Positions 30,728-64,000 of a stretch of DNA of 64,000 nt are shown here, in pieces; the stretch's first letter is position 1; every line of letters begins with the position of its first letter. The DNA lies in assembly GCF_031769215.1 (NCBI RefSeq), contig NW_026782247.1:2666001-2730000 (forward strand). The letters run 5' to 3'. The DNA is from Ylistrum balloti. Lineage: Eukaryota. Below the pieces are notes generated by a model, which made no database searches, was not told where the DNA came from, and worked only from the letters and a program-made list of their open reading frames with translations. The translations under genes and the position numbers were made by a program.

Positions 30728-33700
30728 ATGGCGGAAAACGTAAAGGTAGCAGTTCGAGTGAGGCCATTCATATCCTTTGTAATAAATTCGTTTATCAGTG
30801 TCATCAATGATCACATGTGTTTGAGGATGATTGCAGCATAAGTACAATCGATTCAGCGTTGCCAAGCACGCGCAATCGCTAATCGTCAGGCAAGTCTTTA
30901 TTTCCGGTTCAGTTATTGATACAAAGACTTTGTGGAAACATACCATATTTATGTACTGATCATCGTAGTTTAATAAGTCTAACCAAAACATTTGCTTGTT
31001 TTTCGAAAATGGTTTCAAAGCTGTAAATCAATTCTGTCAGAAGAGGGTTTATTTTAATTGGTAGCGTCCCATGTGTGATTCTATTGGGGCGTCTATTGTA
31101 CATACACGCATAGCTATCTCTAGATATAGTATGCTATATATACTATATACTATAGCAAGATAAGACATGCCTGGTTTGCTACCAAGGAAATAAAACGAAA
31201 AATGCTATTTAAATGTATTAGTCCCACACCAAATGACACAGCAATCTGGTCATGACTTTTCACAGACACATTTACACATACGTTTATTGGGCCCGAGTTT
31301 TGATCGTACATTTTTAAAGTTCTAACAATGTAATGGTTCTGAATAATTGTTGTGATAATAGCATTCATAATGATCTTTAAAAACAAAAATAAAGAAATCA
31401 TTCAAAGACTTAAAACTTAAATTGACATACTTCCTGAAAATTATAGAAGTACTCATCTAGATGGTATAAGATATCATAGTTATCTGTAAACAAAATAACG
31501 TAACAATGGTGATTTCATTTCCGCGAAAGATAACTTTTATCATTGTAACGGCTGGCGTTACTCTTAACAACAGCCAAATATTGACACTCTTACACGTAAG
31601 TGGAGTTGATACAAAAGGCAATGTTCAATCGTTGTCACCGTTCATGTCACACAGTATAAAAAATATGTCAAGGTTAGGTATTAGTGTTACAGACCTATAG
31701 TTACAGATGTACGCTGCGCGATTGTTTACTAGATATACGATATATATACAGTTAGCAAATAAGGTTACTGATAATTACTGTGTATGTCCGGATCTTCCAT
31801 TGAGTCCGGATCTTCCATTGAGTCCGGATTTTCCATTGGTGTTTATTTCAGAAAGAGCTTTTGAATTTTATCAAATTCTGATCCTGAGAAAGTTAGTAAT
31901 TTTCATCCTATTATAAAGGGAGATAACTTCAATCTTTGTAATTACTTGTTATGCACTTATGCTGTTTGCACTTATAACACAGTAATACTGTAGCAATGCC
32001 ACAAATTGTAAACATGAAGTGATATCATCAAAACAATTAGAGCGACGTATCAAGTACAGGGAAAATTTAAAACATAATATTGAAAAACCAAAAATAAAAA
32101 CAATGATGTCTTCTTTTCAATACAGACACAGAGATGTCTTTTCAGGTTTTTCAAAAAGTGCACATTTGTCAAAACATTGGCAGGTTGTACCATTAGATGT
32201 TCCACACCATCAATTGACTATCGTCTATCATCCTACTGATGTCGACATCTTCACAAGTGTGTGAAATCGCTGTTAATTTTTACATTATATCGGATCCTAG
32301 AATTATCCCCCCTTCTCCTCAGTGATCACACGCACGAAAAAAATGTGAGGACAAAGGTAACACCTATTACATAATTTTGTATCAGAAGATCATGTAAGTT
32401 TTTGTTTAAATATAGGAATATTTTAATTAACCAGAAATTATACATAAAATTAACAAACATCAACTGTTTGATACATGTACAAAGTATTAATATATATAGC
32501 AACCTTCATAACATGCAATGTCATTTAATCTACAATACATCAGTAAGGCTACTTCAGTACATGATCCTAACGAATTGACCTTGACACTAGCTCACAATGA
32601 AAGAGAGGAGGACAGAAATGCCACTCCTGTCATCAAGATGGAGGGAAAATGTACGGAGATTTTCAACCCCGAGGATATGAAAGCGGAACCAAAGAAATTC
32701 AACTTTGATTATTCCTACTGGTCACATGATGGATACACGAAGCGCCCGGATGGATATATGGAACCGGCAGAACCGAAATATGCCGATCAGGTACATTTAG
32801 TATAAACTAATCTGATCGGGTTTGACCTTTGAACTTGTTTGTTTAGATATGATGTTACATGTCTCCTCTTTTATCATGTACTGTAATACTGAGGAATTCT
32901 ATCTTCGTATGGTTTTAACTGTACACATAGCATACCTTAATCAACATGTAAACAATTTACTTTGTATCTAATTAAAATTATTTCTTGGGGAACGGAAAAT
33001 ACACATAAAGTCATCAGAACTATATTTAGATCTATCACAGCTGAGTAAAACATCACAGTATATTGTAATATTGGTAGGAACGGAATCACGTGATAGTTGT
33101 TCAAATTGTTTCTCTCTAGCAACGAGTCTTTGACGACCTTGGCAAAGGAGTGCTTGACAATGCCTGGAAGGGCTACAACTGTTCTCTGTTTGCGTACGGA
33201 CAGACCGGAAGTGGAAAGACATACTCTATGGTCGGTTACCAAGCCAATAAAGGGATCGTTCCCATGGTCTGTACCGAGCTCTTCAAGGCTATCGACCAAA
33301 AACGATCCGATGTCAGTGACACTAAAGACAAGGGAGTGTATGAGGTAAAATATATATTTTGTGTGATAGCTAATTGTACGTATAGAACAGTATCCCCGAC
33401 AAGGTGTTTTAGAACGCGACAATAGTCAAAAGTTTGCGATTATCCAGTAAAGGTAATTTTGAATGACATCGTAAGGTATTATAATACACTTTTCTAATGT
33501 TTAGCAACTGACACTACAAATATGCATACAGCATTAATTTTATTTTTGTTACCAAATTTAATCATGGTTCCATTTTACTCGCTCATATACCCGACGGCCA
33601 AGTGAGAATATGCCGTGGTGCGACGCCCTTTCCTTTAAAGAATTTCTTCTCAATAACCAAGAGGACCCAGGGTCAAGACATTGAGTCAATATGCTTTCAA

Positions 33701-36700
33701 GCTTGTCCAAATGAGATACCTTGACCAACTTTTAAGGTCAAAGGTGTTACATTCTTCAGCGGGCTTCTTCTCAATACCAAGAGAAAAAGAACATTTATGT
33801 TATGTCGATAGTAAAATCGTGTCCAAATTCATGACCTTGAAAAGCTCTCATAGAATTAGGACTTTGTTATAAAATGTTGTGCTAATGAAAATATTTGTTT
33901 TTTCCTGTACTGAACAGGTGATGATCAGCATGTTAGAAATTTACAACGAACAGGTGCGTGATTTGCTGAACTCCAAAACAATTAAAAACAGGGGAAGCAT
34001 GAACATCAAGAGTGATCCAAAACGAGGCTTCTACGGTAATAAAACTGAAAATATTCATATAGAATCGCTAAAATTATAGCCCCTATAGTGCCAGAAAGAT
34101 TAAAGCGTTTTGATAGAGACTGAAGCAGGTATATTATTTGTTCTGTCCGTTCTAACATATATTTAATATAATTGTTTTCAGAAAGGTTATATTTTGATTT
34201 GAATATAGATGGTTAAATGGCAACATTTTCGACCTTGTGCCAAAGGAAAATGACATTCGAACGAAAATTTCTCATCAAATCTTCGTTATCGTTTACAAAA
34301 TGTCATGTATTTTTCAAAGATGCTCAACATTCAATACAAGTTTCGAATTATATTTTCATGCAGTTGAAGGACTTATGAAATCGCTTGTGAACAGTTACCC
34401 GGAAATTGAAAATAAAATCAATGAAGGCACGAAAAACAGAACAGTAGCGTCCACCAACATGAACGCCACGAGCAGGTCTGTACAAGCTTTACATTCAGAT
34501 GCGTGACGTCATTTTATATCGAACTGTAGTAACGTTATAAAAATCGGCGCAAAAACTAAAATATATATTATTCTATTCACTGTGTATAACAAACAAATGC
34601 AAAGTGTATCTTGCATAAAGTCAACTCTGAATGAAAAAGTTACCATATTGTTTCTGGATAAATATACGTTCGCAGAAATGGAGAAATAGGGTGGTACAGT
34701 TTTATCTGTTTTTGTGTTGATCTAGATAGAAATTTTTTATCCTATAATCTCTAACCGAAAAGACAAGTAAAACAAGAATAAGTGGTAAAACTATAATAGG
34801 AATGATTAATGAAAATACCCTGCGCGTGACAGGGTTCGAACTAACAACCCTACGATCTCTAACTGGTCAGGCCATCGCTCAACTAACAGAAAATTCCCAC
34901 TTGTGTAAGCTAGTAAGGCGACCTGTACTTCGTACTCTCAGCTTCTACAAAACTATTGAAGCATACAATTGCATCTCGTCCACCATCTAATAGGAATACG
35001 GATATTTTTGAAATGTGTGTAGGAAATATCCATTGTCTACATCAGTATAATGTGTAAGAGTTTTGAAATCGCAATGTTTTGTTACAGCCGCGCTCACACC
35101 ATCGTGGCCATCCACTTCAAACAGGAATCAAAGGATAGCACTGGTCAGAATATGACAAAGACATCAGTTATCAACCTCGTGGACTTGGCTGGCAGGTAAG
35201 ACAAGACCCCAAATTGTAGACCAGAACCCTCATTTATCTGGTCGACAGAATAAGCAAGATTTTTTATGTACCTTTTTTAACTAAAGGCATTCAATGTTAA
35301 TGCCCTTGCTATTTATAGACTTCTGTGTTTAGTCTGACTCTTCACTCGTTATGATAAACAGAAATCTTCCCTTCGCCAAGTCGGTATGGAGTCACAGGTA
35401 TTCTACCTGAGTAACACACATGTACATGTTAAAGGTGTTCTCTGAACGATATTCTGGTTTATGTTTTCACGTTAAATGTCTTTTTAGATAAGCTGTAATG
35501 AATGTGTGGTGAAAAATGAGCACAATGGGATACGATTATCGTGCAGTCGACAAACATATTAGGATGTTGTAATCAGAATGTATTTTGTCAATATCGTTAC
35601 CCATTCTCGAGTTAAATTAACTTAATAAAATTACATAAAATTTACATTTGATAAATATTACTTTTCGTCTCTGTTTTATCAGATGTTATTGTTCTATTCT
35701 CCTATTTTTACTCAATAGAAGACTTGTCGAAGGGCTGAAATAAAACAGACTGATAACAGGTGCTACCTGAAGAAATGTAGTCAGTGTTGATATAACGTAA
35801 TGAGAATAACACGATGCTGGGATGATACCACAACTACAAATGTTATTGAGGTCAAGAAAGAATTATAGTGATTTCAGTACCGTAAAATTATTTTGTTAAG
35901 CAAACTACATTAAATTAATTATTTGAAACCCGTAACAATGTCTGTGTGTTCGAAGTGCGACTTTACCTTGTCCTGCTTACATTATAAAACATATTAATTT
36001 GCTCAGCTTAACTTGCATGTAGTTTATACAGATTAAGCATGGTTTCATTTTATCAGCGAGAGAGTTGCGAGTACTGGAGCACAAGGAGACAGGCTTAAAG
36101 AAGGCAGTAGCATTAACCAGTCTCTAAGTTCACTTGGAAATGTCATCAATGCTCTAGCTAAGAGCAAGCCTTTCAGTAAGTTACAACCTTATATGTTTTG
36201 TAAACAAAACTCAATTTTAGGTAGATGAGATTTAAAATGAGCACATTTATGCAAATTATCATATTTTGAATTAGTTTAGTTTGCTTAAGTAGTTATTTTC
36301 AATATATATCGATTAATGAATTTATACTTAAATACTTTCGAGCATTTCAACTTCATAAATCTGCTCTGAAGTTTGACGTAAAATCCTTTGCAGTTCCGTA
36401 TAGAGATTCAGCATTGACGAAATTGTTAAAGAATGCTCTTGGTGGCAACAGTAAGACTATCATGGTAAGTCATAACATTTATATTACCCCTAGTTATATC
36501 ACATAATTGATACTTTCTTTTACCAAATATTAAACATTTAATGTCGTTTTCATATTAGACTATTGCCAAGTAGATGTTTTTAATAAGCGATATGTTGTAT
36601 TCTGAATTGATAACAAGCAGCTAGGTCTGATTGTTTTGGCACAATTGCATTACTTTATGAAGATTGTAAATAAATACTAACAAAATATAACGGAGTAATC

Positions 36701-39700
36701 CTTCACGTTGATATTTTTCTTGAAGTTGAACATTCCTCTTCAATACCTTTTGAGAGTTTGCATGTTTGATTTAGATTAATGACTGCAATTTTTAATGTAT
36801 AGTTAAAACATTCATTGTATATGTCCTTTGTTCACATTGCAAAATTCAAAACTAGATAACAATATTATTAGGATCAAACGCGACCTTCTCTATTGTATCT
36901 AGATACTTACAAATATCTACTACGTTTCACTAGATTGCTGCACTAAGTCCTGCTGATATCAATTACAAAGAAACTTTATCCACTCTCAGGTTTGGTAAGA
37001 AACATTTCTTGATATTGACAAAATTGTCGGTTCTGTCTTATCGATTTTTTATATTACAATTTTTCCTTTTTTGATAGTCTGTTGTAAAACATGATTTGTA
37101 GTTATGATAGAAGAATTGGGTTGTTATTCGTTAACTGTCGTTATTATTATGTAGCGTTAAAATACACCATTCTGTAATCAGAATGCTAAACGATATAACT
37201 AAAAAGTCAAACGTTTCATTTCAATCCACATCGTTACATATTTTATTTACAAATCAATATGATAGTCGGCGGAGAACTGCAAACTGTTCGTTAAAACCAT
37301 GATTTGATGTTTTCTTGTTTATAAAGCTGATAGAGCAAAAGCGATCAAGACTACAGCGACTGTCAACGAAAATCCCACAGACAAACTTATTCGAGAACTA
37401 CGAGAGGAAAACGCGCGGTTACAGAAGCTGTTACAGGAAGGCGGAATCAGTGCAATACAGGGAGAAAGTTCAGGAGGTACATTTTTTCTGTATATAGACA
37501 GAGTACAAAAAAAGACTGGAAAGTTGAATAGGTCTGTTTTATTCTGCTTTAATCGTAAAATAAGTTGACAGTATCCTTGTTTTTCTATATATGTAGATAT
37601 TATCAGATTTCCAATACGATGTGTTCATTTTTATTACGACGTGTTCATATTCAATTAGTATCTGTGTAACGAAGTCATTTCATCGCTAATGCAGGTTTCA
37701 GTATATTATGTGTAAATATCAAAGTACGTATTGAATTGTAGTCACAAGTGAGGAAAAACGATTATTAGAGGAACAACTTCAACAAAACCAAAGGGAAATG
37801 GAAGAGATGAAAACCACTTGGGAACAAAAGCTAGAGATAGCCCAGAAGGAAAACCAGGTATGTCAACACTCCATCCAACTCTATAAGTTATATAGAAGTA
37901 TTGGTGAATTATTCATCACTATCTACATAAACTCCATGTTCGGAGAGCAGGAGTAATTATATGGAGGTAAATGTTTCTGTGGCGTTTCACAATTACTGTG
38001 AATAAAATATCAAGTGGTTAGGGAAAATGCATATGCATGCACTTCAATTTCATAATAAATAATAAATTTCAAAACATGTTAAATTATGATTAACTGAACA
38101 TTGTATGTTTTCTATGATATCAAATTATTGAAAATGCAAATTATTCCGAATTATGAATTAACACGTTATCTCTTTTCAGAATATTGAAATAACAATTATA
38201 TATATAAATAATAATTATATATGTTTAGTATGATAATTAGTATGATATTGTGGCTTCCACTCTTTTGATTTATAGGCGAAAATTGAAGATGAAAGAAGGT
38301 TGGCGGAGCATAAGAAAGTTACACCGCACTTCTGGAATCTTAATGAGGATCCTGCACTTTCCGGAATGGTCGTCCACTTTTGCGATAAAGGTGATTAATA
38401 TTTTATTTGATTCTCGTAGACGTAAAACTACGTAATGATATAATGAACATGTAGTGAAATAATTGAATATATAGCATTTCTCTCTAGCTTTCGTCGCACA
38501 CATGAATGTTCAGGTATTTACAGTAACTATATATAATTGGCTAATAGTGTGATATACATTAGATTTGAAATCCATTTTCAAACATTGAAAAGAGTTTTTT
38601 TTTAATTCTAAAGGTATGTAAAGCCTTTTGTCAGCATAGTATGACTTAAATTGACGTTTCGTATATCTTCTTCAGACAAAGCTCTAATAGGTAGAAAGGC
38701 ATCAGAATCAGGTGCAGATATACCACTTGCAGGCTTGGGGTGAGTGTTTAAGATGTTAAGAAAACATAATCTTTCCTTTCCACTTTTGTCCTCAGCTGTA
38801 CACAAACAGCAGCCTACAATAGTACGTAATGACAGTGTGTTCCTTATATATCGAATTGGTACTGTTTCCATCAATCTGAAATATCTTAGTATAGTATAAT
38901 TTATTCTACCATCATAATGCAATGATGACAAGTGACTAAGACGTCCATGAGACGTTACAACATAGAAGATTCGTCCATATTCATCATCACAAATTACACT
39001 CGTCCAATTATAGGATTGTTGGATTCAGACCCCAATTTCAAGAATGTTCTTTAAATTATGGCAATTGTAACCGCTCTCACACAAAGCATAGCATATTCAG
39101 CAAAAGTTAAGACCAATTACTGAGTCTAATATTGCATCCCTTTGAGCAGACTTCAATTTTAAAAGTTTACCAAGTTATATCAAGATCTTAAAAGAAAGAA
39201 AAATACATTGCAAAGTTAGATCAAGATCTTTATAAAAACAATTACATATTCTAATTTAAATCTTCAGCATCCAACCCAACCATGCGGAGATCCTGAACAA
39301 AGATGGGTCAGTGCTAATTATACCAGTTGATACCGCCAAAGTGACCGTCAATGGTCAGAAGATATTAGCCGAGACTAGACTACATCATCACGACAGGTAT
39401 GCTATATTCACGGTACACAGCATAACTAACATAATTTTAATATCTATACATGACTAATATTATGCTCCGGGTTGTGAGTTTATGATCAGTCATTCCTGAC
39501 AACTAATTAAAACATATTTGAACAAAACCACCGAAAAATGTAATTGTCTTCCATCTATTGTATTTTCAAGCTTTCAAACAACATTGTTAGGCAAAACATT
39601 TAGACCTGTATGTAAATATGGCATGCATTTTATTCCTCATAATTTAACCATGTATTAGTTGTGCTGAAAGATTAACTATTAATGGTGTTGTGTGGAAATT

Positions 39701-42700
39701 TTATTTCCTCAGATATGTTCTTAATTAATGATATTCAAATAGTTAAATGACGGTACAAGAAAACGGTATGCACAGAAAAAAAAATCAATACACTTGTGAC
39801 AGAACACTTAATTACTAATAATTATAAAAGAAATTCAGATCTCACACCAACGAAAATTTGCAGAAGCGCGTGTTACAATAATTGCACCTATATGCACTGC
39901 ACCAAGGCTGAATTATAATATCGGAAAGGTTTCGGTTCCAAGATTAATACATTATTTAATGCACATTCGATTGTTTGATTTCGTATGCGTTCCATGACAC
40001 TTGACCTGTGCTTGTATGTAACTTTCTTTCTGGGATGCTACCGATTGCCATTCAGTCTCATTACAATACCGGTTATTTTTGAAAGCATCTCATTTTTATT
40101 GATTCTTTATCATCAATGGTGTAGGGTACTGTTCGGAGCGAATGCTCTATACATTTTCCATCATCCTTCTGAAGCTGCAAAACTTGCTGAAAGTGGGGGT
40201 AAAATCAACACTCCAACCTTCGATCAGGCGCAACAGGAGCTGGCTATGATGGCCGGCCTGGTTTCAAAAGATGGCACGTCTAAAGGTTAGTTGCAGGAAA
40301 ACGATGATACTTGGTCGGATAAAGAAAATTCAGAAATATGTCGAGGACCTCATTCTTTACCTTATCGTTAATAAGAAATAGTTCTCTGGTTTTCATAACA
40401 TGGTTTCAATAGACAAAGAAAAAAATACTGAAGTGTCAAAAAACATAATTTGATCATTAATATAAAGAGTAATTAACAAAGTGAAATGAAAAATTGTGTT
40501 CACAAGCAAAACTACATCCTTCAAGTGTAACACGGTACCGTTTGCACATGCCTTAGTTGTTAATTGTCTTTAATAACATATTTAACTTGTTTCAATTAAT
40601 TGCGTCGTTGCAGAGGACCTGATTTTACAAGAAGAAGTCACACAGGTACTCCGGATCGTGAATGAAGCCAACGCCATGTCTGAGGAAATGGACAAGAAAG
40701 TAAAGTTTGAGGTCGCTTTACTAGCTCCCTCATTTCGAAGTCTATACAGAGGCCCTACAGAGGTACCATCTTAAAATAATAAAACATTTTTTTTAAAAAA
40801 AAACGAGCAAATTGAATGTGGTCCATGATGCAGCTATTATTTTAAGAATTTCCTCGTTAAAATGACTTTAAATTTACCCTACCTATATAACGTCATATTT
40901 AATGATAACCAATACATAGCCATCAAGGCAGCCGGTCAGCGTAAGACGTTTGACGTCATTTTTATGAGAGTCCACACACATGCAGTGGACAGCAGTATAA
41001 TACCTGTGTGGTTTATTCAGTTTAACCTCTTTAATGTACGTTCATAAATAATTTTGCACTGAAAATAATAAGGAAGCATGTTTGAAATGCTTCAAAACGA
41101 GAAACGTAGTGATCACCTCCATAGCAATAAGAGACAGTTCAGCTGTCACATTAACGATCTTCTATCGCAGCCAGTATATAACGCTTTCTACAACACATAG
41201 CATGAAATAGATATATATATAATAGAATTGGAAATACTTCTCATTAGTAAGCACTTCCATTTAAAATCTTCAGATGCTAACATAGTTTTACTGCCTCAGT
41301 AGGCCTACGTACATGACTGCCTAATTGGCAACACAATATTACGTCATCAATAATGGCTTGACTGTCTATTACGAAGTTATAGAAATGGGAGATAATTATG
41401 TCTTTTCGATTATACTGTATTTATTCTGATATCATTTTTATAAATTGTCAGTATTTCTTGAGGTAAGAATCTGTGTGTCTATCCTACTTTTAACCATAAT
41501 AATGATTTAATTGGATGTTAACTGTTTCAGGCGGATATCACTGAAGTGAGAACTAATGAGCGAACGTATCATAAACTTTTAAATTCACTTCTCTTATTCC
41601 CATTCACGTGTATGATAATAAGCACAACCCTTTCCAGTGACTGCAATGTTTGGAAAATCATTATTAAATTAATATCTTAGATCACCTGTTTTTTCTTAAT
41701 GTTTAGCACTCATGTTTGTGTAATATATCATATTTGTGAATACAACTATATTAACGAGAAATGCTTTGATACAAGCAAATGACATCAAGCGTGTGTTAAG
41801 TGTGACGTCATTGTTGCATTCACTACGCGCTCAGCACTCGGAGAGAAAATACTGTTCCATCGTGACTTCTGTTAAATAAAACTCTACAAAGGGCAAATGA
41901 AAAGCACCATTTAATACAAATTTAGAATTCGATACAATGGAGCCAAATACTGAATAAACCATACATCATACATCCTATTCGGACCCGTCAATGATCCTAC
42001 AGGCCTACATGTCGAATCATACGAGACACTTCTAGAATGAGAGGTGTACTAGTTCCATAATTTGATTCTATACATTTCATAGTTTTTATGTCTAATGATA
42101 TCAGAAAAACGTCAGGTACGAGTGTTTATCATGAACTATGTCAACATGAATTAAAATTTATGGTGTGTGGCTGGAAAACTTTTTGATCGACAATCGATAT
42201 CAGAAGATATCAAATAATTAGAAGTAAGTAACGTTCACGTTCACGTTTCCCTTGTAAGCTTTGGGCAAGACCAATTGAAATATATTGATTGACACTGGCT
42301 TATAAATAAGAATGAATTCACTGTAGTGTTCTATATTATAATTATTAGTGTGAGCAAGTTGAATGAGTCCGAGTGATCTCCCCTTGTATAAAAGCACGGG
42401 ATTAACCTGAAATACACTGGTTCCTGAAACGCCATTGTTGTTGTGATTTGATTCGCTGGTCATAGTTTAATCTGTAATGATTCAATTCGGAACCCATAAC
42501 GACACTACATTCATAATCATACATAACTGATGAGGAAACAAATCAAAACTAAGTTGAAATGTAATTTTCATTTATAAAGCGAAATTATTGTACGAGTCAT
42601 TTAGATTACAGTGTATATAAGTATATTAAGCAATCGTGCATTCATAAAAAATGTTTGTCCTTGTGGGTAAATCATATCTAACTGAACAATTGGAAATAAA

Positions 42701-45700
42701 TAGGATAACATAATATAATGTAGTCAAACCCATGTTTCTTTATAAGTGTGAGTCAGTACAGAATAAAATGCAATGTGTAACTTTATTTCAAGGAATAGAT
42801 AGTTAGATCACATATAAATTCATATCATACCCATATTAGGTGCGGATGAAAGTGAAGGATCTCGTCTCTGGTAACCACTGGATGTGGACTAAAGACAAGG
42901 CTATACATCGGCACGCACTCATGCAGCAGTTGTACCAGGACTTTATCTCCAAGGACGACAACTGGAAAGTTTCAAAGGTTAAAGCTCGTCTATATATAAT
43001 AAAATTATATACAAGTCATCTCGAAAGTTTATTTGTGCAACATGTTTGTAACAAAACCCAAAAGAATACAAGTAAGCTGAACGAACGTACAAAGTCAAAC
43101 AGACGATAAAAAAAGTCTTTACAAATAAGAAAAAAAAAGATCGACTATTTTTTTAGTTGTTGCTTTCATTATCTTTTATAAGTTTAATGTTATATATGGG
43201 AAATACACACTAATATGATAACTAAAGAAAACTCCAGTTAGTAGTATTCACTCGAATCTCTTCAGGAAGATGACCCCTTCTGGGAGCCGGCTGATACAGA
43301 AATCATGATCGGAGTAGCACATCTAAACCTACTGTCACTTGCATATAAATGCAGTATAGAGGAAAACGCCGATATTCACGATCACAAGACAACAATCAAA
43401 GGTATTGGCTGGGCTACAATATGATTTAAGATTGTCTCTGCGGTGGTGTAAAACCGTTTCAAGTTTACGTTTCAAGTCAAAAGAAGTTTTCATTTTAATT
43501 GAATACGAGATAAATGCTGGTATCTAGAGTTTTATACACGATTACCTTACATATTGAACTTCATAAACTCTTCTGATAACTTTATCAACCTTAATTTAAT
43601 ATTTTAAGTTGATATGACATGGATATGATCACACTATAATGTAATGATCTTTGTGCGTATATTGTTCATATGAATAACTCAAAACTGACAATAAAATACA
43701 CTTTATGGACGAAGTAATGAACTACATTAACATATCTGAATACCTATTTCAGGTCATTTAAAATTGGAGGTGATTCCATGTGATAAAAACAAGCAACCCT
43801 TGGAGGATATTGAACTTCTGGAAGATACAACAGAATTAGTAGGTTGTTTTTATTTTCGTAAGATCACTAGTCTATATATCAGATTTGCTATAAATAACAA
43901 TAAGTATTACAACACTACAACTTTATGTATTAAAGTTTGATAACAACACAACATGCACACTTACTACTTAACACGTAAGTCTAGCTTTTATCTTACAATA
44001 AAATGACTCAAATCGACGCAACCCAGCAGCATACTGTGATGTAGCAAATCATTCGCTTGACTTTCATCTAGACGACGTTGATTTGTTTCCCGCGTATGGA
44101 TGTGAATAGCGATGGGGTCACCTGCCTGATCGACCCACGCAGATGTTCTGTCGTTACTCGGGGCTCTCCTGCACAAACGTGATGACTATAAATTGCTATT
44201 TTTTTCAGATTGGCAAAGATTTGACTTTCTTGTTGAAAATTAACGGAGCAAGAGGACTACCTACAAATATTACAAAAGTAAGATTGCAATAAATAACTAC
44301 TATAAGTTATTTACAAGTTTTAAAATCTGAAACATGTTTGCATTTCTCATGCAAATTGCCTGTAAACAATTACCGATATCATGTATATATGTAATGGTGT
44401 AATTATTCAAGGTGTTTTGGTCGATTTTGTTTTGGAAGTTAATCAAATGTATATAACAATATCTGTTGTTATAATGTAAAATGTAGCATGTAATATGTTC
44501 TGTTATTTTCCAGTCATTTTGCAAATTCAAGTTTTACCTGGATCACGACTATGTTCAAACGAAGGAGGTAGCAGGGATGACTCCAGATTTCGACTTTGAA
44601 CAATTTTATGTACAAAACCCTGTTACAAAACAGGTAAGAAGGACAATTCTCCTTTCTTTCTTAATATTGAGAATTCTGTTAGAAAAGGAAAGACAATTTA
44701 GAGCGTGTTGTATTCTAAACAACTGGCAATATACAAACATACGTCCTGTAACCTGACGGTGACTAGCAGAGTTTTTACAAACATTGGGTAAGGAGAATAT
44801 AGATATTTTATCAATTTTTACTCATTTTGTAAATAAGATGTAGATGTATTGATGTGTTGAATAATGTTTTTGTCTATCGTCTTCTATGGTTAGTTTTATT
44901 GTTCATCATTTAATGTTAAATATTTATGTTGTATATTTCCATTTCAGTATTTTTCATGATCATTGCTTAACTTTCAGTGAGCGAGGATTCTTCCTCGTAT
45001 ACTTTGATTAACTGTACAATTTGGTTTTCAAATACAGTTTGTAAAATGATTCGAACAATGTCTTGTTTGTATTGCTAACGACGGGAATGAAAGTATTTCA
45101 GAATTAATAGGTCTTTGTCAATTACCATTGGCTATACATTCAATGTGTAAATGCTATTTACAATAGGTATATATCATATATATTTTGTATCAAAAATTAG
45201 TTTGTATGTCGGTCAATTTCATGTTCGCTTTATAAATTAAGTAGTCTCCACTTTACTTAACATAAATAAAAAATAACGATGACTTTAACGACGACAAAAC
45301 TGATACGAATGTCGTTATAACTTGATAGTGTTTATCAATTAGCAGTGCTAATCATGAATATTTCTAAAAGTATAGGAGGACATTTGCTAAAGATAGTATT
45401 TTTGCCATCAGTTTTTAGTTGTTGTTGGTGACGTTTTATTCATTTTTTTTTCAATGTTACAGTTCCTGGATTATTTGAAAGATCGTCATCTAGTGATTGA
45501 AGTCTGGGGACGACAAAAGGATGAGCAATCGCCGTCAAAAGGAAACACAGGTCTTCTACCAACAAAGGACTTGATGATACGAGAAAAAACTTTCATAGGG
45601 GTAGGTGAAAACGAATAATTTCTTAATGGTTAAAAAACAAATGTTAAACATATCGCAAGCATTAAAGTATGTGCTAATTGTTAAAATTATATTTTACTGT

Positions 45701-48700
45701 AAAAAGTGTTTCATGTGCGCCTCCTCACCAACTGTGTTCGGTCCGAAACCTATATACACATGTTGTATGTTTATTTTTCAATCATCTAGTAAGTTTTCTT
45801 TATTTGATATGTCAGTAAATTAAGATGAAAATTGCGTTTGAATTACATTGTTTCATTACAGAAATCTGCGTTAGAAGACGGGGACACTGGGGAAAAGAAG
45901 AAAAAGAAAAAGAAGAAAAGAAAGAAGGAGCATGATGTTGATGCCGCTGATGGGACAAATGGTATAATAATTCCGGTGCCGCCACTTAGTGGACAAAAGA
46001 GTGATGTACGCGACAACATGTCAAATATGTCGAAAGAAGAAGAAAAGAAATTAAGAGACGATCTTTCTAGATTAGAAAGTGAAAAACAGAGATCTGAAAC
46101 AAAATTGAAAGAGACGATAGATGCTCACAAAGCGGAAATGTCTCAAAAGGTGCAGGAAATAGAGAGTTTTAAATCTAGAGGGAGACAACTACACCAGGAA
46201 AACATGGATAACAAGAAAACACTGGTTTGTATTGAAGGCTCTCCTTACACACAAAGACATTGTGAAGTCATTGTTTGGTACATCATCATAGCTTAATACA
46301 CTATTATATATGTATATAATCAATAAAGTACTAACGACAATACGGACAAATGATTTGTTAAATTTTCGAGGCAATATGCCCCTTTATCAAGACGCAAATA
46401 TTACATAAATTACATTACATAAATAGTACATAAAACAAACACAAAGTCAAAAATCTAAATCGGAAATGTAAATGTAGGTGACTCGATAATCCTCTGGGTC
46501 GATGGACGCCGAAGGCCTTTTATATAACAGTGTTATAGATTAGATCACATAACGGTAATTCTTTAATTGATAAATAATGTAGATAGAATGTAAATAAAGG
46601 TCAAATCTATCGTAAATAAGAAAATTATGAACTTCATCAACTCAACAACACACGACATTAATAAAGATATTTGTGACGATATATATTCCTAAACTCAAGG
46701 TACTGTGAGTAACTATGCCCTAAATCAAAGGTACTGTGAGTAACTATGCCCTTAACTCAAGGTACTGTGAGTAACTATGCCCTTAACTCAAGGTACTGTG
46801 AGTAACTATGCCCTTAACTCAAGGTACTGTGAGTAACTATGCCCTATACTCAAGGTACTGTGAGTAACTTTGCCCTTAACTCAAGGTACTGTGAGTAACT
46901 ATGCCCTTAACTCAAGGTACTGTGAGTAACTATGCCCTATACTCAAGGTACTGTGAGTAACTTTGCCCTTAACTCAAGGTACTGTGAGTAACTATGCCCT
47001 AAACTCAAGGTACTGTGAGTAACTATGCAATAAACTCAAGGTACTGTGAGTAACTAGTGAGTAACTATGCCCTAAACTCAAGGTACTGTGAGTAACTATG
47101 CCCTAAACTCAAGGTACTGTGAGTAACTATGCCCTAAACTCAAGGTACTGTGAGTAACTATGCTATGTGAATGATAGTATATTGTATCTTCATATTTTCC
47201 TTTTTCTTTAATCAGCAACCCAACAACTTATTATACAATATTCATTATGTTGTTTTCTTCAACGTATGAAGAGTTCATATTTTTATTTCACTAGGAAGCT
47301 GTCAAGGAGCTGCTAGCAAGGACGAGAGGAAACGGAAAATCTACCATAAATGTACGTATGTTATGTAACCTCCTGAATACGTTTCAGGATTAAACGATAA
47401 TGTTGCTGGTCTTCTAGTGGGGGTTTGTTCTGGTGATAATTGATCGTTTGGCTCTGATCTAATTAATTCTTAATGTGGGTCCTTTGTACAATCAGCAGGC
47501 ATTCAGCATCCAAAAAATGTAAACACATATATTTTGATTATCTTTATAGCAACGCTGTTCAATCTTTTTGATAAAGATACAGTAGGACAAAATATTGACG
47601 TAAAATTCATTATACAGTCATCTCCTCCTTCTAGGACTCGTCAGTGATGTGTCCAAATTTTACAACCTATTAGACGACTGAAGAAAAAGAAAATAGATTG
47701 AAAGAAATATGAAAGTTTTGATGGGAAGGTACATTAGTCCAGGATATCCCACATATCTGATCATTCTAGGGTATCCCACATATCTGATCATTATAGGATA
47801 TCCCACATATCTGATCATTATAGGATATCCCACATATCTGATCATTCTAGGGTATAACACATATCTGATCATTCTAGGATATATCCCACATATCTGATCA
47901 TTCTAAGGTATCCCACATATCTGATCATTCCAGGGTATAACACATATCTGATCATTCTAGGATATCCCACATATCTGATCATTCTAGGGTATCCCACATA
48001 TCTTATCATTCTAGGATATATCCCATATATCTGATCATTCTAGGATATATCCCACATATCTGATCATTCTAGGATATCCCACATATCTGATCATTCTAGG
48101 ATATATCCCATATATCTGATCATTCTAGGATATATCCCACATATCTGATCATTCTAGGATATCCCATATATCTGATCATTCTAGGATATCCCACATATCT
48201 GATCATTCTAGGATATCCCACATATCTGATCATTCTAAGATATCCCACATATCTGATCATTCTAGGATATCCCTAGGGTATCCCACATATCTGATCATTC
48301 TAGGGTATCCCACATATCTGATCATTCCAGGGTATAACACATCTGATCATTCTAGGGTATCCCACATATCTGATCATTCTAGGGTATCCCACATATCTGA
48401 TCATTCTAAGGTATAACACATATCTGATCATTCTAGGGTATAACACATATCTGATCATTCTAGGATATCCCACATATCTGATCATTCCAGGATATCCCAC
48501 ATATATGATCATTCTAGGATATCCCACATATCTGATCATTCTAGGACATCCCATATATCTGATCATTCTAGGATATATCCCACATATCTGATCATTCTAG
48601 GATATCCCATATATCTGATCATTCTAGGATATATCCCATATATCTGATCATTTTAGGATATATCCCATATATCTGATCATTCTAGGATATCCCACATATC

Positions 48701-50327
48701 TGATCATTCTAGGGTATCCCACATATCTGATCATTCTAGGGTATCCCACATATCTGATCATTCTAGGGTATCCCACATATCTGATCATTCTAGGGTATAA
48801 CACATATCTGATCATTCTAGGATATCCCACATATCTGATCATTCTAGGGTATCCCACATATCTGATCATTCTAAGGTATAACACATATCTGATCATTCTA
48901 GGATATCCCATATATCTGATCAGTCTAGGGTATAACACATATCTGATCATTCTAGGGTATAACACATATCAGATCATTCTAGGATATATCCCACATATCT
49001 GATCATTCTAGGGTATAACACATATCTGATCATTCTAGGATATATCCCACATATCTGATCATTCTAGGATATCCCACATATCTGATCATTCCAGGATATC
49101 CCATATATCTGATCATTCCAGGATATCCCACATATCTGATAATTCCAGGATATATCCCACATATCTGATCATTCCAGGATATCCCATATATCTGATCATT
49201 CCAGGATATCCCACATATCTGATAATTCCACATATCTGATCATTCTAAGGTATAACACATATCTGATCATTCTAGGGTATAACACATATCTGATCATTCT
49301 AGGGTATAACACATATCTGATCATTCTAGAGTATAACACATATCTGATCATTCTAGGATATATCCCACATATCTGATCATTCTAGGGTATAACACATATC
49401 TGATCATTCTAGGATATATCCCACATATCTGATCATTCTAGGGTATAACACATATCTGATCATTCTAGGATATATCCCACATATCTGATCATTCTAGGGT
49501 ATAACACATATCTGATCATTCTAGGATATATCCCACATATCTGATCATTCTAGGATATCCCATATATCTGATCATTCCATGATATCCCACATATCTGATA
49601 ATTCCAGGATATATCCCACATATCTGATCATCCCAGGATATCCCATATATCTGATCATTCCATGATATCCCACATATCTGATAATTCCAGGATATATCCC
49701 ACATATCTGATCATTCCAGGATATCCCATATATCTGATCATTCCAGGATATCCCATATATCTGATAATTCCAGGATATATCCCACATATCTGATCATTCC
49801 AGGATATCCCACATATCTGATCATTCCAGGATATCCCACATATCTGATCATTCCAGGATATCCCACATATCTGATCATTCCAGGATACCCCATATATCTG
49901 ATCATTCCAGGATATACCGCATATCTGATCATTCCAGGATATACCACATATCTGATCATTCCAGGATATCCCACATATCTGATCATTCCAGGATATACCA
50001 CATATCTGATCATTCCAGGGTATAACACATATCTGATCATTCTAGGGTATCCCACATGTCTGATCATTCTGGGATATACCAAATGTAAATCTTTGAATTA
50101 AGCCAGTAATAAAATATAAATACGTCAGAGAAACAGTCAGCCCCCAGAAAAAAACTTTTTATTGTTTAAATATCGGAATACACATTTTTGATATATACTA
50201 ATGGTTGTAATGTCATTGTTTAATGTGTTTTATCCAACAGGTGTCCGATTTAGAGAGGACGTTGGATCCATCGGCGCCACAAACGGTGGAACATGGCAAC
50301 ACATCCAAAGCTTGTATCTTACAATAG
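30728..50327 (+). CDS. KIF28: Kinesin-3 KIF28/KLP-6-like protein, about 1042 aa, 25 exons: 30728-30769, 32596-32790, 33120-33344, 33918-34035, 34364-34475, 35088-35195, 36057-36175, 36394-36464, 36934-36994, 37327-37476, 37742-37857, 38276-38390, 38676-38739, 39268-39396, 40125-40285, 40614-40762, 42840-42977, 43266-43401, 43753-43838, 44209-44277, 44514-44633, 45463-45600, 45862-46224, 47295-47351, 50241-50327
   Basis: All exon phases chain to 3129 nt, with an in-frame stop at 30719 upstream of the ATG. Motor motifs: [25 protein letters not shown]-loop GQTGSGKT, switch I NATSSRAH, switch [18 protein letters not shown]. These are followed by a neck coil, an FHA domain (NLNEDP...HHDRVLFG), an EDDPFWEP kinesin-3 block, a C2-like region, a coiled coil and the C-terminal CILQ. 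Subfamily assigned from recalled similarity, not from a search. Confidence 0.9.
30770..32595 (+). other. U12-type (minor spliceosome) AT-AC intron 1 of the kinesin gene
   Basis: The 5' end is ATATCCTTT (30770), the branch-like CCTTGAC lies at 32579-32585 with A 11 nt before the junction, and the 3' end is CTCAC (32595). Splicing restores RVRPF-NERE. Confidence 0.88.
31169..31830 (+). repeat. Copy B of the duplication of about 580 bp, inside kinesin intron 1
   Basis: Matches 28699-29280, with an extra internal segment (about 31680-31770) and three terminal 18-bp GTCCGGATCTTCCATTGA-like repeats. Confidence 0.9.
33650..33870. mobile_element. Probable Helentron/HINE internal fragment
   Basis: GACCTTGA/AGGTCAAAGG motifs and CCAAATTCATGACCTTGA resemble bivalve HINE cores (recall only). 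Confidence 0.35.
34815..34890 (-). mobile_element. Degenerate tRNA-derived SINE head
   Basis: B-box-like GTTCGAAC and A-box-like TAGTTGAGCGATGG on the minus strand. Confidence 0.35.
44030..44185 (+). mobile_element. Highly diverged V-SINE-like copy
   Basis: TTGACTTTCATCTAGACG...TATGGATGTGAATA...GGTCACCTGCC...CCCACG parallels the 25932-26165 copy. Confidence 0.5.
46695..47165. repeat. 31-bp minisatellite (about 15 units), CTCAAGGTACTGTGAGTAACTATGCCCTAAA
   Basis: Period of 31 (46741 and 46772), located in a kinesin intron. Confidence 0.95.
47735..50085. repeat. 27/29-bp minisatellite (about 85 units), ATATCCCACATATCTGATCATTCTAGG
   Basis: Fills most of the last kinesin intron and generates spurious MIRYVGYPR ORFs on the minus strand. 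Confidence 0.97.
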
Positions 50328-50539
50328 TTTTCAGAGTTTCACTAGATCACTATACAAGCTGAAACTCTGAGCTTATCTGTGATATCAACCTAGCTCTTGT
50401 ATTAATGGGACAAGATACTCACATATCATATAACCTGTGATACCAACCAAACCAAGGTTTGTTTATAAATCATGTGTGACCAAAGAGTAGTTCAACTGGT
50501 TATTGGCATTCACATACAGATTAATGTGTGGCAGATCTC

Positions 50540-51060
50540 GGAAGGTAACGTCTTGACAGGAACCGTCTCGATAGGCATTGTCTTGGTAGATACTGTTTCA
50601 GTACGTACCGTCTCGATAGGCATTGTCTTGGTAGATACTGTTTCAGTATGTACCGTCTCGATAGGCATTGTCTTGGTAGATACTGTTTCAGTACGTACCG
50701 TCTCGATAGACATTGTCTTGGTAGATACTGTTTCAGTACGTACCGTCTCGATAGGCATTGTCTTGGTAGATACTGTTTCAGTACGTACCGTCTCGATAGA
50801 CATTGTCTTGGTAGATACTGTTTCAGTACGTACCGTCTCGATAGGCATTGTCTTGGTAGATACTGTTTCAGTACGTACCGTCTCGATAGGCATTGTCTTG
50901 GTAGATAATGTTTCAGTACGTACCGTCTCGATAGGCATTGTCTTGGTAGATACTGTTTCAGTACGTACCGTCTCGATAGGCATTGTCTTGGTAGATATTG
51001 TTTCAGTATGTACCGTCTCGATAGACATTATCTTGGTAGATACTGTTTCATTAGGTACAG
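50540..51060. repeat. 45-bp minisatellite (about 11 units) made of three 15-bp subunits
   Basis: ACCGTCTCGATAGGC-ATTGTCTTGGTAGAT-ACTGTTTCAGTACGT, with period 45 (50562 and 50607). Confidence 0.95.
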
Positions 51061-51899
51061 TCTATAATAATAATGATTACAATATTAAGAAATGATGATA
51101 ATAATAAAAGACTGAATTTAAGATTGATGACATTTTGTGTTTATAACGCTCTTCTTACAAGTGGTCAACATCAGAAATGTCGATATTTATAATCAGTAAA
51201 ATTAAAACATCACAGATAAATATAAATATCACTGTAAAATACATTTAAAAAGACGCTTAAATGAAATAGATTATAATAATAGATACACGATGAATGTGTA
51301 TAAAGCATTTGAAACACACATAAAAAAATAATAAGATACAGTTGCGATCATAAGATCTTCTAAAACTTCCAGACAGTGGAATTTTATGTTTGAAAGTTTG
51401 ACATATAATTATATGCATTCAATTTTAAAACTTTTCAGGTTTTGACACTGCCTAACATTGTCTGGTAAACGATTCCAAAGTGTTGGTCCATTACACTTTT
51501 CTGTTTTATATTTAGGGGTGACACATTTCTGTCCAGTAGATGACCTGGTCTGTCTTTAGCGAACACTAGATACTAATACATTACAGTCCAGATAATTTGG
51601 ACATAGTTTGTTAATAACTTTGTACATCATATGTACTGTTATATTTAACTATATTACTAAATGGTAACTATTTGAATTTAGTGAAAAACTCTTCGCCTGA
51701 TATAGAATAATCTGCATCTAGTATTATGCGTCAAATTCTCTTTCACAACCTTTCTAACTTTTTAATTTATATTAGTGAACAGTTTCCCTAAATATTTGAA
51801 CAACAATTAAAGTAAGGTAAAATAAACCGTTTAAAGTATGTTATTCTTGATAAAATAGGCCAGAATCATGGACATGTTTGTTCAATGTAAGGGTATCAT

Positions 51900-52215
51900 T
51901 TCGGTAGGTTCCATTTCAGTAGGTACCAGTTCATAGGTACCGTCTTGGTATGTACCGTCTCGATAGGTACCTCTTGGTAGGTACCATCTCAATAGGTGCC
52001 GTCTCGATAGGTACCTCTTGGTATGTACCGTCTCAATAGGTACAGTCTCAATAGGTACCGTCTCGATAGGTACCTCTTGGTATGTACCGTCTCGATATGT
52101 ACCTCTTGGAAGGTACTGGTACCGTCTCGATAGGTACCTCTTGGAAGGTACTGGTACCGTCTCGATAGGTACCTCTTGGAAGGTATTGGTACCGTCTCAG
52201 TAGGTACCGTCATTA
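51900..52215. repeat. 14-15-bp-monomer minisatellite related to the 45-bp array (GTACCGTCTCGATAG / GTACCTCTTGG)
   Basis: Shares ACCGTCTCGATAGG with 50540-51060. Confidence 0.9.
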
Positions 52216-63918: not shown

Positions 63919-64000
63919 GTATTGTTAAACATGTGCATAGGAGTGTGAAGAAAGAAGTTCACAAAATAGTTATGCAAAATGAGAAAACGTGAGACTAAAT

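What the first reader, a model, noticed from the sequence alone, without database searches (positions are those of the whole stretch)
50241..50327. Kinesin-3 (KIF28-like) motor ending in a CaaX prenylation box: candidate lipid-anchored kinesin
Seen: the last exon, spliced in phase 0 after a 2.9-kb repeat-filled intron, reads [28 protein letters not shown]-stop, with C-I-L-Q at 50313-50324 preceded by a flexible S/T/K-rich linker. I found no PH, PX or CAP-Gly domain in the tail. Known: CaaX motifs ending in Q are farnesyltransferase substrates; the kinesin-7 CENP-E is farnesylated, while kinesin-3 motors normally reach membranes through PH (KIF1A), PX (KIF16B) or adaptor domains. Inference: this lineage's KIF28-like motor may tether directly to membranes or vesicles through a prenyl group, a cargo-attachment mode I do not know of for kinesin-3.
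Basis: partly seen in the sequence, partly recalled or inferred. Interest (0 to 1): 0.72.

Follow-up and report, generated by a model that had tools for sequence, protein, structure and literature searches.

The report
Conserved prenylation box on KIF28-type kinesin
The last exon of this scallop kinesin-3 gene really does end in a lipid-attachment (CaaX) signal, and the same signal closes most invertebrate and many protist KIF28-type motors but not vertebrate KIF28, so a lipid-tagged kinesin-3 lineage seems to have gone unnoticed.

Summary
Confirmed and widened. Window 50241-50327 (+) is the true last coding exon of a 26-exon kinesin-3 gene (30728-50327). Its exons match, at 100% identity, the RefSeq protein 'kinesin-like protein KIF28P' of the scallop Ylistrum balloti (1047 aa), which ends ...NTSKACILQ.

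The CaaX box is not peculiar to this lineage. Of 170 invertebrate and protist KIF28-like proteins, 140 end C-a-a-X. In 132 non-redundant C-termini the a2 position is always I/L/V/M, and X is Q (69), L (30) or M (26). Ser stands three residues before the Cys in 130 of 132. Carriers include sponges, cnidarians, placozoans, echinoderms, amphioxus, molluscs, chelicerates, choanoflagellates and far-flung flagellates. Vertebrate KIF28 lacks the box (5 of 119, none canonical), and so does the one nematode orthologue I saw.

CILQ is in an experimentally derived farnesylation-positive set for yeast. Ser at -3, one of the two positions of the published high-affinity PDE6delta ciliary sorting signal, is matched; -1 is Ala here.

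Prenylation itself is untested, and I found no RNA run for this species.

The parts
30728..30769 (+). coding exon 1 ([14 protein letters not shown]), followed by an AT-AC type intron (donor ATATCC, acceptor ..CAC) that runs to 32595
32596..37476 (+). coding exons 2-10, encoding the kinesin motor domain and neck: 32596-32790, 33120-33344, 33918-34035, 34364-34475, 35088-35195, 36057-36175, 36394-36464, 36934-36994, 37327-37476
   Evidence: Exon chain; 100% tblastn match to P0293; Pfam Kinesin E = 2.7e-107
37742..40285 (+). coding exons 11-15, encoding coiled coil 1 and the FHA domain: 37742-37857, 38276-38390, 38676-38739, 39268-39396, 40125-40285
   Evidence: FHA E = 5.9e-10
40614..45600 (+). 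coding exons encoding the CC2, MBS and MATH/C2-like tail domains: 40614-40762, micro-exon 41531-41545, 42840-42977, 43266-43401, 43753-43838, 44209-44277, 44514-44633, 45463-45600
   Evidence: matches KLP-6 chain 7WRG residues 443-848, E = 7.3e-76
45862..46224 (+). coding exon with a Lys-rich patch (E-K8-RKK-E) and a helix-like, heptad-rich stretch; the Lys patch is shared only with the scallop co-orthologues
   Evidence: all 4 variants in another individual's DNA are synonymous
47295..47351 (+). penultimate coding exon ([19 protein letters not shown]), the first half of a conserved tail helix
47352..50240 (+). last intron, phase 0, 2,889 nt, holding a 27-bp tandem repeat of about 85 copies at 47741-50081
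50241..50327 (+). last coding exon including the stop codon; encodes the end of the conserved helix, a variable linker and ...NTSKACILQ
   Evidence: no variant in another individual's DNA while the flanks vary
50304..50306 (+). Ser codon three residues before the Cys; Ser at this position in 130 of 132 non-redundant family C-termini
50313..50324 (+). CaaX box Cys-Ile-Leu-Gln (Cys1044 of the 1047-aa protein), the predicted farnesylation site
51103..51108 (+). first canonical AATAAA after the stop, just beyond a 45-bp x 11 tandem repeat (50562-51063); a possible poly(A) signal
   Evidence: inference only

Best explanation
The exon is the genuine 3' coding end of a KIF28/KLP-6-type kinesin-3.

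The protein has an N-terminal motor followed by neck, CC1, FHA, CC2, MBS and a MATH/C2-like beta-sandwich. These are the modules that hold C. elegans KLP-6 in a folded, inactive monomer. After them comes a tail extension of about 190 residues. It holds a Lys-rich patch, a helical stretch, a conserved helix, a variable flexible linker and the C-terminal motif Ser-Lys-Ala-Cys-Ile-Leu-Gln.

I infer the following steps.
1. Cytosolic farnesyltransferase adds a C15 isoprenoid to the Cys, because X = Q is a farnesyltransferase-type ending.
2. The last three residues are probably trimmed and the new C-terminus methylated.
3. The lipidated tail then inserts reversibly into a cargo membrane. It may be helped by the basic patch, the beta-sandwich domain and any pairing of two tails.
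4. Concentration on the membrane would release autoinhibition and start transport.

What is shown: the exon, the gene model, family membership, and deep conservation of an extended S-x-[A/T/V]-C-a-a-[Q/L/M] ending. What is inferred: lipid attachment, processing, membrane insertion and activation.
For: Exon and model. The model is identical to RefSeq P0293 apart from the micro-exon that I missed.

Family: Pfam finds Kinesin, FHA and KIF1B domains and no PH, PX or CAP-Gly. The tail matches KLP-6 structure 7WRG with E = 7.3e-76. Trees place it inside a KIF28 supergroup.

Conservation of the box:
- 111 of 130 and then 140 of 170 relatives end in a CaaX box.
- a2 is I57/L49/V25/M1; X is Q69/L30/M26; Ser at -3 in 130 of 132.
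- The tail just upstream is otherwise poorly alignable, with 30% mean column identity, yet S, C and Q are invariant in 14 Q-type tails.
- The box appears in complete transcriptome ORFs of Choanoeca, Hemimastix, Ancoracysta, Pharyngomonas and Diphylleia.
- It also appears in transcript-sized contigs, for example a 1006-aa protein on a 3,234-nt contig.

Substrate quality: CILQ and 13 other Q-ending variants seen in the family are in the 'prenylation positive' training set for yeast. None of the family's tetrapeptides that I checked by eye is in the negative set (PMC9231725 S1 File).

Selection in this species: in DNA of another individual, 5 of 5 exonic differences in exons 45463-46224 are synonymous, the last two exons have none, and the flanking non-coding DNA has 19.

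Precedent: CENP-E and T. brucei KinesinCaaX are farnesylated kinesins (PMC3206815).
Against: There is no biochemical evidence of lipidation for any KIF28-type protein.

I found no RNA run for this species. Use of the exon therefore rests on the RefSeq model, on homology across the junction and on transcripts of relatives.

A single farnesyl group binds membranes weakly. The window protein has no nearby palmitoylatable Cys and no polybasic run next to the box; the Lys patch lies about 140 residues upstream.

Some relatives have annotated isoforms or models without the box, such as Biomphalaria isoform X2, crustaceans and Ciona. The vertebrate and nematode members work without it.
Confidence: 0.55

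Rival explanations
1. The Cys is farnesylated, but the lipid is mainly a handle read by a prenyl-binding carrier of the PDE6delta type, with release by ARL3. It would then sort the motor to cilia or flagella, or to another compartment, rather than act as a stable membrane anchor.
For: The published high-affinity PDE6delta sorting signal depends on positions -1 and -3 before the farnesyl-Cys. INPP5E has Ser and Ile there, GRK1 has Ser and Met (PMC5512577).

The family has Ser at -3 in 130 of 132 C-termini, and A/T/V/M/I/L at -1 in 129 of 132. That is far more constraint than a bare CaaX box needs.

C. elegans KLP-6 works in male-specific sensory cilia (PMC3675070). The protist carriers named are flagellates, by my own knowledge of those taxa.

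A lone farnesyl with no second signal is typical of carrier-shuttled proteins (established knowledge).
Against: The -1 residue is mostly Ala, including in this window, not the bulky Ile or Met of the measured high-affinity cargoes.

About a quarter of family members end in L, which predicts geranylgeranyl. I did not check how that lipid fits the published PDE6delta data.

No expression or localisation data exist for CaaX-bearing KIF28 proteins. The Ser could instead be a phosphorylation switch.
Confidence: 0.25
2. The conserved C-terminal Cys motif has a role other than prenylation, for example S-acylation, metal or redox chemistry, or recognition of the free C-terminus by a partner domain.
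For: No lipidation has been shown. The invariant Ser at -3 is not explained by CaaX rules alone.
Against: The Cys sits exactly four residues from the end in 140 proteins. The a2 position is always aliphatic. X is restricted to the classic farnesyltransferase and geranylgeranyltransferase-I residues Q, M, S, L and F. Many of the tetrapeptides are experimentally positive for prenylation in yeast. I know of no other system that demands this geometry.
Confidence: 0.08
3. In this scallop the exon is a minor or unused 3' end, and the main product ends elsewhere, for example by read-through of the 47351 donor (...[17 protein letters not shown]-stop).
For: No RNA data are available for the species. 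Alternative ends without the box are annotated in some relatives.
Against: The RefSeq model uses this exon. The conserved tail motif spans the junction. The exon is invariant between two individuals while its flanks vary. A scan of the + strand from 46225 to 56900 found no other plausible CaaX-ending exon.
Confidence: 0.03

Closest known systems
C. elegans KLP-6 (kinesin-3; full-length structure PDB 7WRG)
   Same: Same domain order: motor, neck, CC1, FHA, CC2, MBS, MATH. The tail aligns over chain residues 443-848 with E = 7.3e-76. In the IQ-TREE tree the one nematode orthologue sits inside the same 'Q-type' clade as the window protein, though on a long branch.
   Different: The nematode orthologue I could read (Parastrongyloides, P0311) ends in a Lys-rich tail without a CaaX box. 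I could not read the C-terminus of C. elegans KLP-6 itself. [quoted passage not shown]
Vertebrate KIF28 (rat KLP6, linked to mitochondrial morphology and transport)
   Same: Same supergroup in both trees and the same Pfam architecture. NCBI gives the scallop protein this name.
   Different: Vertebrate KIF28 forms a separate clade (100* support) together with one abalone paralogue. It ends ...LKNDVALIVKKKRE plus a few residues. Only 5 of 119 have Cys at -4, and none is canonical. Coelacanth, caecilian and chimaera keep a decayed S-x-x-C remnant. The two CaaX-bearing paralogue groups have amphioxus members, and tunicate members in the Q-type group, but no vertebrate members in my sample.
CENP-E (kinesin-7) and Trypanosoma brucei KinesinCaaX
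   Same: Both are N-terminal-motor kinesins that end in a CaaX box and have been shown to be farnesylated (PMC3206815).
   Different: They belong to other kinesin families. CENP-E is kinesin-7, and the trypanosome motor could not be placed in any family. Both act in chromosome or nuclear segregation, not in vesicle-type transport. Neither is described with an FHA, MBS or MATH tail.
KIF1A/UNC-104 (PH domain) and KIF16B (PX domain)
   Same: Kinesin-3 motors that bind cargo membranes directly through the tail (established knowledge). Activation by concentration on the membrane is the accepted model.
   Different: They use folded lipid-binding domains. Here Pfam finds no PH or PX domain, and the proposed contact is a covalently attached isoprenoid.
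INPP5E and GRK1, high-affinity farnesylated cargoes of PDE6delta
   Same: Ser at -3 before the farnesyl-Cys and a non-polar residue at -1.
   Different: The -1 residue is Ala in the window protein, against Ile or Met in those cargoes. They are unrelated proteins, and binding of the kinesin tail is untested.

Membership tests
Kinesin-3, KIF28/KLP-6 subfamily | N-terminal kinesin motor domain | tested here: met
   Pfam PF00225, E = 2.7e-107, residues 10-357 of P0293
Kinesin-3, KIF28/KLP-6 subfamily | FHA domain after the neck and first coiled coil | tested here: met
   Pfam PF00498, E = 5.9e-10, residues 481-546; the single exon alone gives E = 4e-6
Kinesin-3, KIF28/KLP-6 subfamily | KLP-6-type tail (CC2, MBS, MATH beta-sandwich) and no PH, PX or CAP-Gly domain | tested here: met
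   7WRG chain residues 443-848, E = 7.3e-76. Pfam lists only KIF1B and a weak C2-C2_1 match in the tail.
Kinesin-3, KIF28/KLP-6 subfamily | Groups with named KIF28/KLP-6 proteins in a tree, apart from KIF13 and KIF14 | tested here: met
   FastTree on 155 rows: supergroup support 99*. IQ-TREE quick on 78 rows: 98*, with the window in the Q-type clade, sister to Argopecten P0289. The C-terminal 40 residues were left out of both trees.
CaaX-box prenylated proteins (farnesyltransferase substrates) | Cys exactly four residues from the C-terminus | tested here: met
   Codons 50313-50324 followed by the stop at 50325-50327
CaaX-box prenylated proteins (farnesyltransferase substrates) | Aliphatic a2 residue and an X residue accepted by farnesyltransferase | tested here: met
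   The box is C-I-L-Q. CILQ is listed in the 'Prenylation (positive)' training set for yeast (PMC9231725 S1 File).
CaaX-box prenylated proteins (farnesyltransferase substrates) | Motif conserved in orthologues | tested here: met
   140 of 170 relatives; a2 always I/L/V/M; X is Q, L or M in 125 of 132
CaaX-box prenylated proteins (farnesyltransferase substrates) | Flexible, accessible linker before the Cys | tested here: inconclusive
   The 10-60 residues before the motif vary in length and are rich in G, S, N and K across relatives. No structure was predicted.
CaaX-box prenylated proteins (farnesyltransferase substrates) | Isoprenoid actually attached, then -aaX cleavage and methylation | not testable with these tools
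   Needs labelling or mass spectrometry
High-affinity PDE6delta cargo (ciliary sorting signal) | Ser at -3 relative to the farnesyl-Cys | tested here: met
   The window has T-S-K-A-C; the family has Ser in 130 of 132. The criterion comes from PMC5512577.
High-affinity PDE6delta cargo (ciliary sorting signal) | Bulky hydrophobic residue at -1 (Ile or Met in the measured cargoes) | tested here: inconclusive
   Ala in the window. Family counts: A86, T17, V16, M5, I3, L2.
High-affinity PDE6delta cargo (ciliary sorting signal) | Nanomolar binding to PDE6delta and release by ARL3 | not testable with these tools
   Needs peptide binding assays
Kinesin-7 (CENP-E-type farnesylated kinesin) | Kinesin-7 motor with a long coiled-coil stalk and kinetochore-binding tail | tested here: not met
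   The FHA domain and KLP-6-type tail place the protein in kinesin-3

The most novel reading that the evidence does not exclude
KIF28-type kinesin-3 motors were prenylated before animals arose, possibly already in the last eukaryotic common ancestor. Their extended ending S-x-[A/V/T]-C-a-a-X is a sorting code read by the PDE6delta-ARL3 system. That would make them lipid-tagged motors of ciliary or flagellar membranes, or of the vesicles that feed them. The code would then have been lost in vertebrates and in at least some nematodes, the two groups that hold the only members studied so far.
Probability: 0.22. Interest if true: 0.85.

Novelty: new variant of a known kind. Interest (0 to 1): 0.72.

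Why it matters
How KIF28/KLP-6 motors hold their cargo is open. [quoted passage not shown]

A covalent lipid at the tail tip would be a new way for a kinesin-3 to meet a membrane. The box is conserved from sponges to amphioxus and occurs in distant protists. Kinesin-3 motors are otherwise known to use PH or PX domains or adaptor proteins.

It would explain why the two studied members, from rat and a nematode, gave no hint of it. It also gives a simple, cheap test in tractable animals: a Cys-to-Ser mutant, farnesyltransferase inhibitors and click-labelling. The invariant Ser at -3 links the motif to a published ciliary sorting rule, and that link can be tested with peptides.

Tried and rejected
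1. RNA support in this species. Two run searches found only X1. It holds the introns too, so it is DNA. Laying it gave polymorphism data but no splice joints.

2. Single-exon searches. Pfam on ten tail exons and a PDB search with one exon gave only noise, apart from the FHA match. The multi-exon protein could not be passed to the search tools by reference. I therefore reached full-length relatives through one motor exon and went on from the hits.

3. The C-terminus of C. elegans KLP-6. I tried to read it through PDB alignments with nematode and priapulid tails. The alignments stop before the end, so KLP-6 itself is unchecked.

4. Other possible 3' ends. A scan of the + strand from 46225 to 56900 for C-x-[ILVM]-x-stop found only one other hit (53735...RCNMV), with no homology or exon context. 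I rejected it.

5. Chance motif or wrong exon: rejected on conservation and on the RefSeq match.

7. Literature. Searches for KIF28 or KLP-6 together with farnesyl, CAAX or prenyl gave no relevant paper. The one paper that holds both KIF28 and CAAX uses CAAX for the formin INF2. The 2005 paper that presents three prenylation-motif predictors does not mention kinesins.
Full report
OBSERVATION

Window 50241-50327 (+) reads [28 protein letters not shown] followed by a stop. The Cys-Ile-Leu-Gln codons are at 50313-50324. The exon has a clean acceptor. It joins exon 47295-47351 in phase 0 across a 2,889-nt intron, most of which is a 27-bp tandem repeat of about 85 copies.

GENE MODEL

I chained exons on the + strand from splice-site scores and reading-frame continuity. 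This gave a 25-exon, 1042-aa kinesin-3 running from 30728 to 50327.

A later homologue search returned P0293, 'kinesin-like protein KIF28P [Ylistrum balloti]', 1047 aa. Its last 28 residues are identical to this exon. A global alignment shows that P0293 equals my model plus five residues. tblastn maps every exon to the window at 100% identity, including 47295-47351 and 50241-50324. The five residues come from a 15-nt micro-exon at 41531-41545, flanked by tttcag| and |gtgag.

RNA AND POPULATION EVIDENCE

I found no RNA run. The only holder, X1, covers the introns as well, so it is DNA, and it differs from the window at roughly 1% of sites.
- All five differences inside exons 45463-45600 and 45862-46224 are synonymous.
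- The last two exons carry no difference.
- Nineteen differences lie in the flanking introns and the 3' region.

The sample is small, but it is what purifying selection on these reading frames predicts.

WHAT THE PROTEIN IS

Pfam finds Kinesin (E = 2.7e-107), FHA (5.9e-10), KIF1B and a weak C2-like match. It finds no PH, PX or CAP-Gly domain.

Residues 440-861 align to the full-length C. elegans KLP-6 structure 7WRG over chain residues 443-848 with E = 7.3e-76. That stretch covers the FHA, CC2, MBS and MATH modules, which lock KLP-6 in an autoinhibited monomer (PMC9314371).

After the MATH domain the scallop protein continues for about 190 residues. This extension holds a Lys-rich patch shared only with scallop co-orthologues, a helical stretch, a conserved helix, a variable linker and the ending. 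The conserved helix motif (...G-x-x-T-I-x-V/I-x-D/E-L-E-x-x-L) runs across the 47351/50241 junction. This independently supports the splice.

THE KEY RESULT: THE BOX IS FAMILY-WIDE

A search of cluster representatives with one motor exon, followed by blastp with my model, showed that the best full-length tail-matching representatives mostly end C-a-a-X. Cluster look-ups named them:
- Diadema (CSIM) and Apostichopus (CIVQ)
- Biomphalaria (CVVL) and Limulus (CILL)
- the choanoflagellate Choanoeca (CAVM)
- Hemimastix (CLIL), Ancoracysta (CTIL), Pharyngomonas (CIIQ) and Diphylleia (CTIS)

Several of these are complete ORFs from transcriptomes.

Two tail-directed homologue searches gave 170 invertebrate and protist proteins of 500 aa or more, of which 140 end in a CaaX box. 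In 132 non-redundant C-termini:
- a2 is I (57), L (49), V (25) or M (1).
- X is Q (69), L (30), M (26) or S (4), with single cases of N, V and F.
- The residue before the Cys is A (86), T (17), V (16), M (5), I (3) or L (2).
- The residue three before the Cys is Ser in 130 of 132.

The tails just upstream barely align (30% mean column identity), yet S, C and Q are invariant in 14 Q-type tails.

Many of the 30 proteins without the box are flagged partial or low quality, or are unnamed (hypothetical or unnamed-product) models. Others are annotated alternative isoforms, such as Biomphalaria X2, which stops about 15 residues short. Some contigs that carry the box are transcript-sized, for example a 1006-aa protein on a 3,234-nt contig.

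WHERE THE BOX IS ABSENT

A profile search seeded with a stingray and a nematode tail returned 119 vertebrate KIF28 clusters. Only 5 have Cys at -4, and none is canonical. They end ...LKNDVALIVKKKRE plus a few residues. Coelacanth (..DSLGCIKP), caecilian and chimaera keep what looks like a decayed S-x-x-C remnant.

The one nematode orthologue in hand (Parastrongyloides) ends Lys-rich, without a Cys. I could not read the end of C. elegans KLP-6 itself.

TREES

The last 40 residues were excluded from both trees: FastTree on 155 rows and IQ-TREE quick with LG+G4 on 78 rows. Both recover a KIF28 supergroup (99* and 98*). Within it:
1. A vertebrate KIF28 clade plus one abalone paralogue, without the box (100*).
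2. A small clade with the box that includes sea cucumber.
3. A large clade (98*) holding choanoflagellates and two old metazoan paralogue groups.

One of those paralogue groups ends mostly in L or M (98*) and runs from sponges, Trichoplax and cnidarians to amphioxus, echinoderms, molluscs and chelicerates. The other ends mostly in Q (94) and runs from sponge and cnidarians to amphioxus, tunicates, echinoderms, nemerteans, flatworms and molluscs.

The window protein lies in the Q-type group. It is sister to Argopecten P0289 on a long stem, within a scallop-specific pair of Q-type co-orthologues. The nematode sits inside the Q-type protostomes, but on a long branch.

These are quick trees. Placements of long branches are unsure, and the root is not inferred. 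I therefore claim antiquity of the box (at least pre-metazoan), not a dated origin.

IS THE BOX A GOOD SUBSTRATE?

It is established that an X residue of Q, M, S, A or C directs farnesyltransferase, and that L or F directs geranylgeranyltransferase-I. In the yeast data of PMC9231725 (S1 File), CILQ is in the 'Prenylation (positive)' set. So are CSIQ, CSLQ, CTIQ, CVLQ, CVIQ, CIVQ, CTVQ, CSVQ, CLLQ, CNVQ, CNLQ, CTLQ and CLMQ. None of the family's tetrapeptides that I checked by eye is in the negative set.

MECHANISM

Most likely (0.55): farnesylation of Cys1044, the usual trimming and methylation, and reversible insertion of the tail tip into a cargo membrane. Membrane concentration would then relieve the KLP-6-type autoinhibition.

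A lone farnesyl binds membranes weakly, and there is no adjacent second signal here. The anchor would therefore need help from the basic patch, the beta-sandwich domain or pairing of tails.

The main rival (0.25) keeps the lipid but makes it a handle for a prenyl-binding carrier. PMC5512577 shows that high-affinity, ARL3-released, cilium-directed cargoes of PDE6delta are defined by Ser at -3 and a hydrophobic residue at -1. The family's near-invariant Ser at -3 fits this. The usual Ala at -1 fits only loosely. KLP-6 is a ciliary motor.

A non-prenyl role for the motif (0.08) and an unused exon (0.03) are unlikely.

NOVELTY

Farnesylated kinesins are known: CENP-E, and the trypanosome KinesinCaaX, whose authors found orthologues only in kinetoplastids.

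I found no paper that links KIF28, KLP-6 or kinesin-3 with a native CaaX box or with prenylation. The library searched lacks most subscription papers, so this is not proof of absence. The scan's own notes hold nothing on it.

I rate it a new variant of a known kind. The gene is annotated, but the lipid signal and its depth of conservation appear undescribed.

LIMITS

- Everything about lipidation is inference.
- Many public proteins are automatic models, some built partly by homology. The transcriptome ORFs are the independent part.
- C. elegans KLP-6 is unchecked.
- The trees are quick.

Noticed in passing
window 30770-32595: The first intron of the kinesin gene has an ATATCC donor and a ..CAC acceptor (U12-type AT-AC). 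The RefSeq protein requires exactly these boundaries: residues 1-14 map to 30728-30769 and residues 15-79 to 32596-32790.
   Followed up: partly
window 41531-41545: A 15-nt micro-exon (ADITE) with good splice sites lies in the 2-kb intron between 40762 and 42840. It is present in the RefSeq protein and hard to predict without transcript evidence.
   Followed up: yes
P0151-P0156, P0080 (Apostichopus japonicus): Isoforms annotated for one sea cucumber locus (all on one contig) end in two different C-termini...SSRMCVVM and ...GSKACIVQ. Both are CaaX boxes with Ser at -3. This points to alternative last exons that both keep the signal.
   Followed up: no
P0159 vs P0160 (Biomphalaria glabrata); P0181, P0243, P0194, P0199: Some L/M-type members have an annotated isoform or model that stops at ...IPKEKG.., about 15 residues before the box. 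Splicing may switch the lipid signal on and off. Both crustacean models seen (a barnacle and a spiny lobster) are of this short form.
   Followed up: no
P0366, P0367, P0362, P0355 (coelacanth, caecilian, chimaera, sawshark KIF28): Basal vertebrate KIF28 proteins keep a polybasic run followed by S-x-x-C close to the end (for example ..KKKRDSLGCIKP). This looks like a decayed remnant of the box.
   Followed up: partly
P0271/P0288 (Pecten), P0280/P0289 (Argopecten), P0281/P0292 (Mizuhopecten): Scallops carry two Q-type co-orthologues, on the same chromosome-scale contig in Pecten and in Argopecten. The copy in this window is the fast-evolving one (stem length about 0.5) and alone has the Lys8 patch. 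Both copies keep ..NTSKAC(V/I)(I/L)Q.
   Followed up: partly
window about 56967-64000 (+): The next gene downstream looks like SMC4. It has an N-terminal MPAPKKKKGQK.. stretch and a Walker A exon (..IIGPNGSGKSNVIDSMLFVFG..) near 59200-59400.
   Followed up: no
window 46688-47163, 47741-50081, 50562-51063, 51892-52208: Four tandem-repeat arrays (31 bp; 27 bp x 85; 45 bp x 11; a 15-bp-based array also scored at longer periods) surround the last two exons. The terminal exon sits in a unique island of about 480 bp between two of them.
   Followed up: partly
window about 50372: In the DNA of another individual (run X1), one contig carries about 100 extra letters just after the stop codon region. 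This is an insertion/deletion polymorphism in the presumed 3' UTR.
   Followed up: no
window 6510-7325 (+): A 272-codon stop-free stretch with a hydrophobic segment, an acidic run and a Pro-rich tail. It may be a single-exon membrane protein or a large exon. Not examined.
   Followed up: no
window 14796-15833 and 20800-22000: A long tandem array that reads as repeated ..MLGTYMA.. units, and a CT-rich low-complexity block that contains the only N run (21428-21568, left untouched).
   Followed up: no
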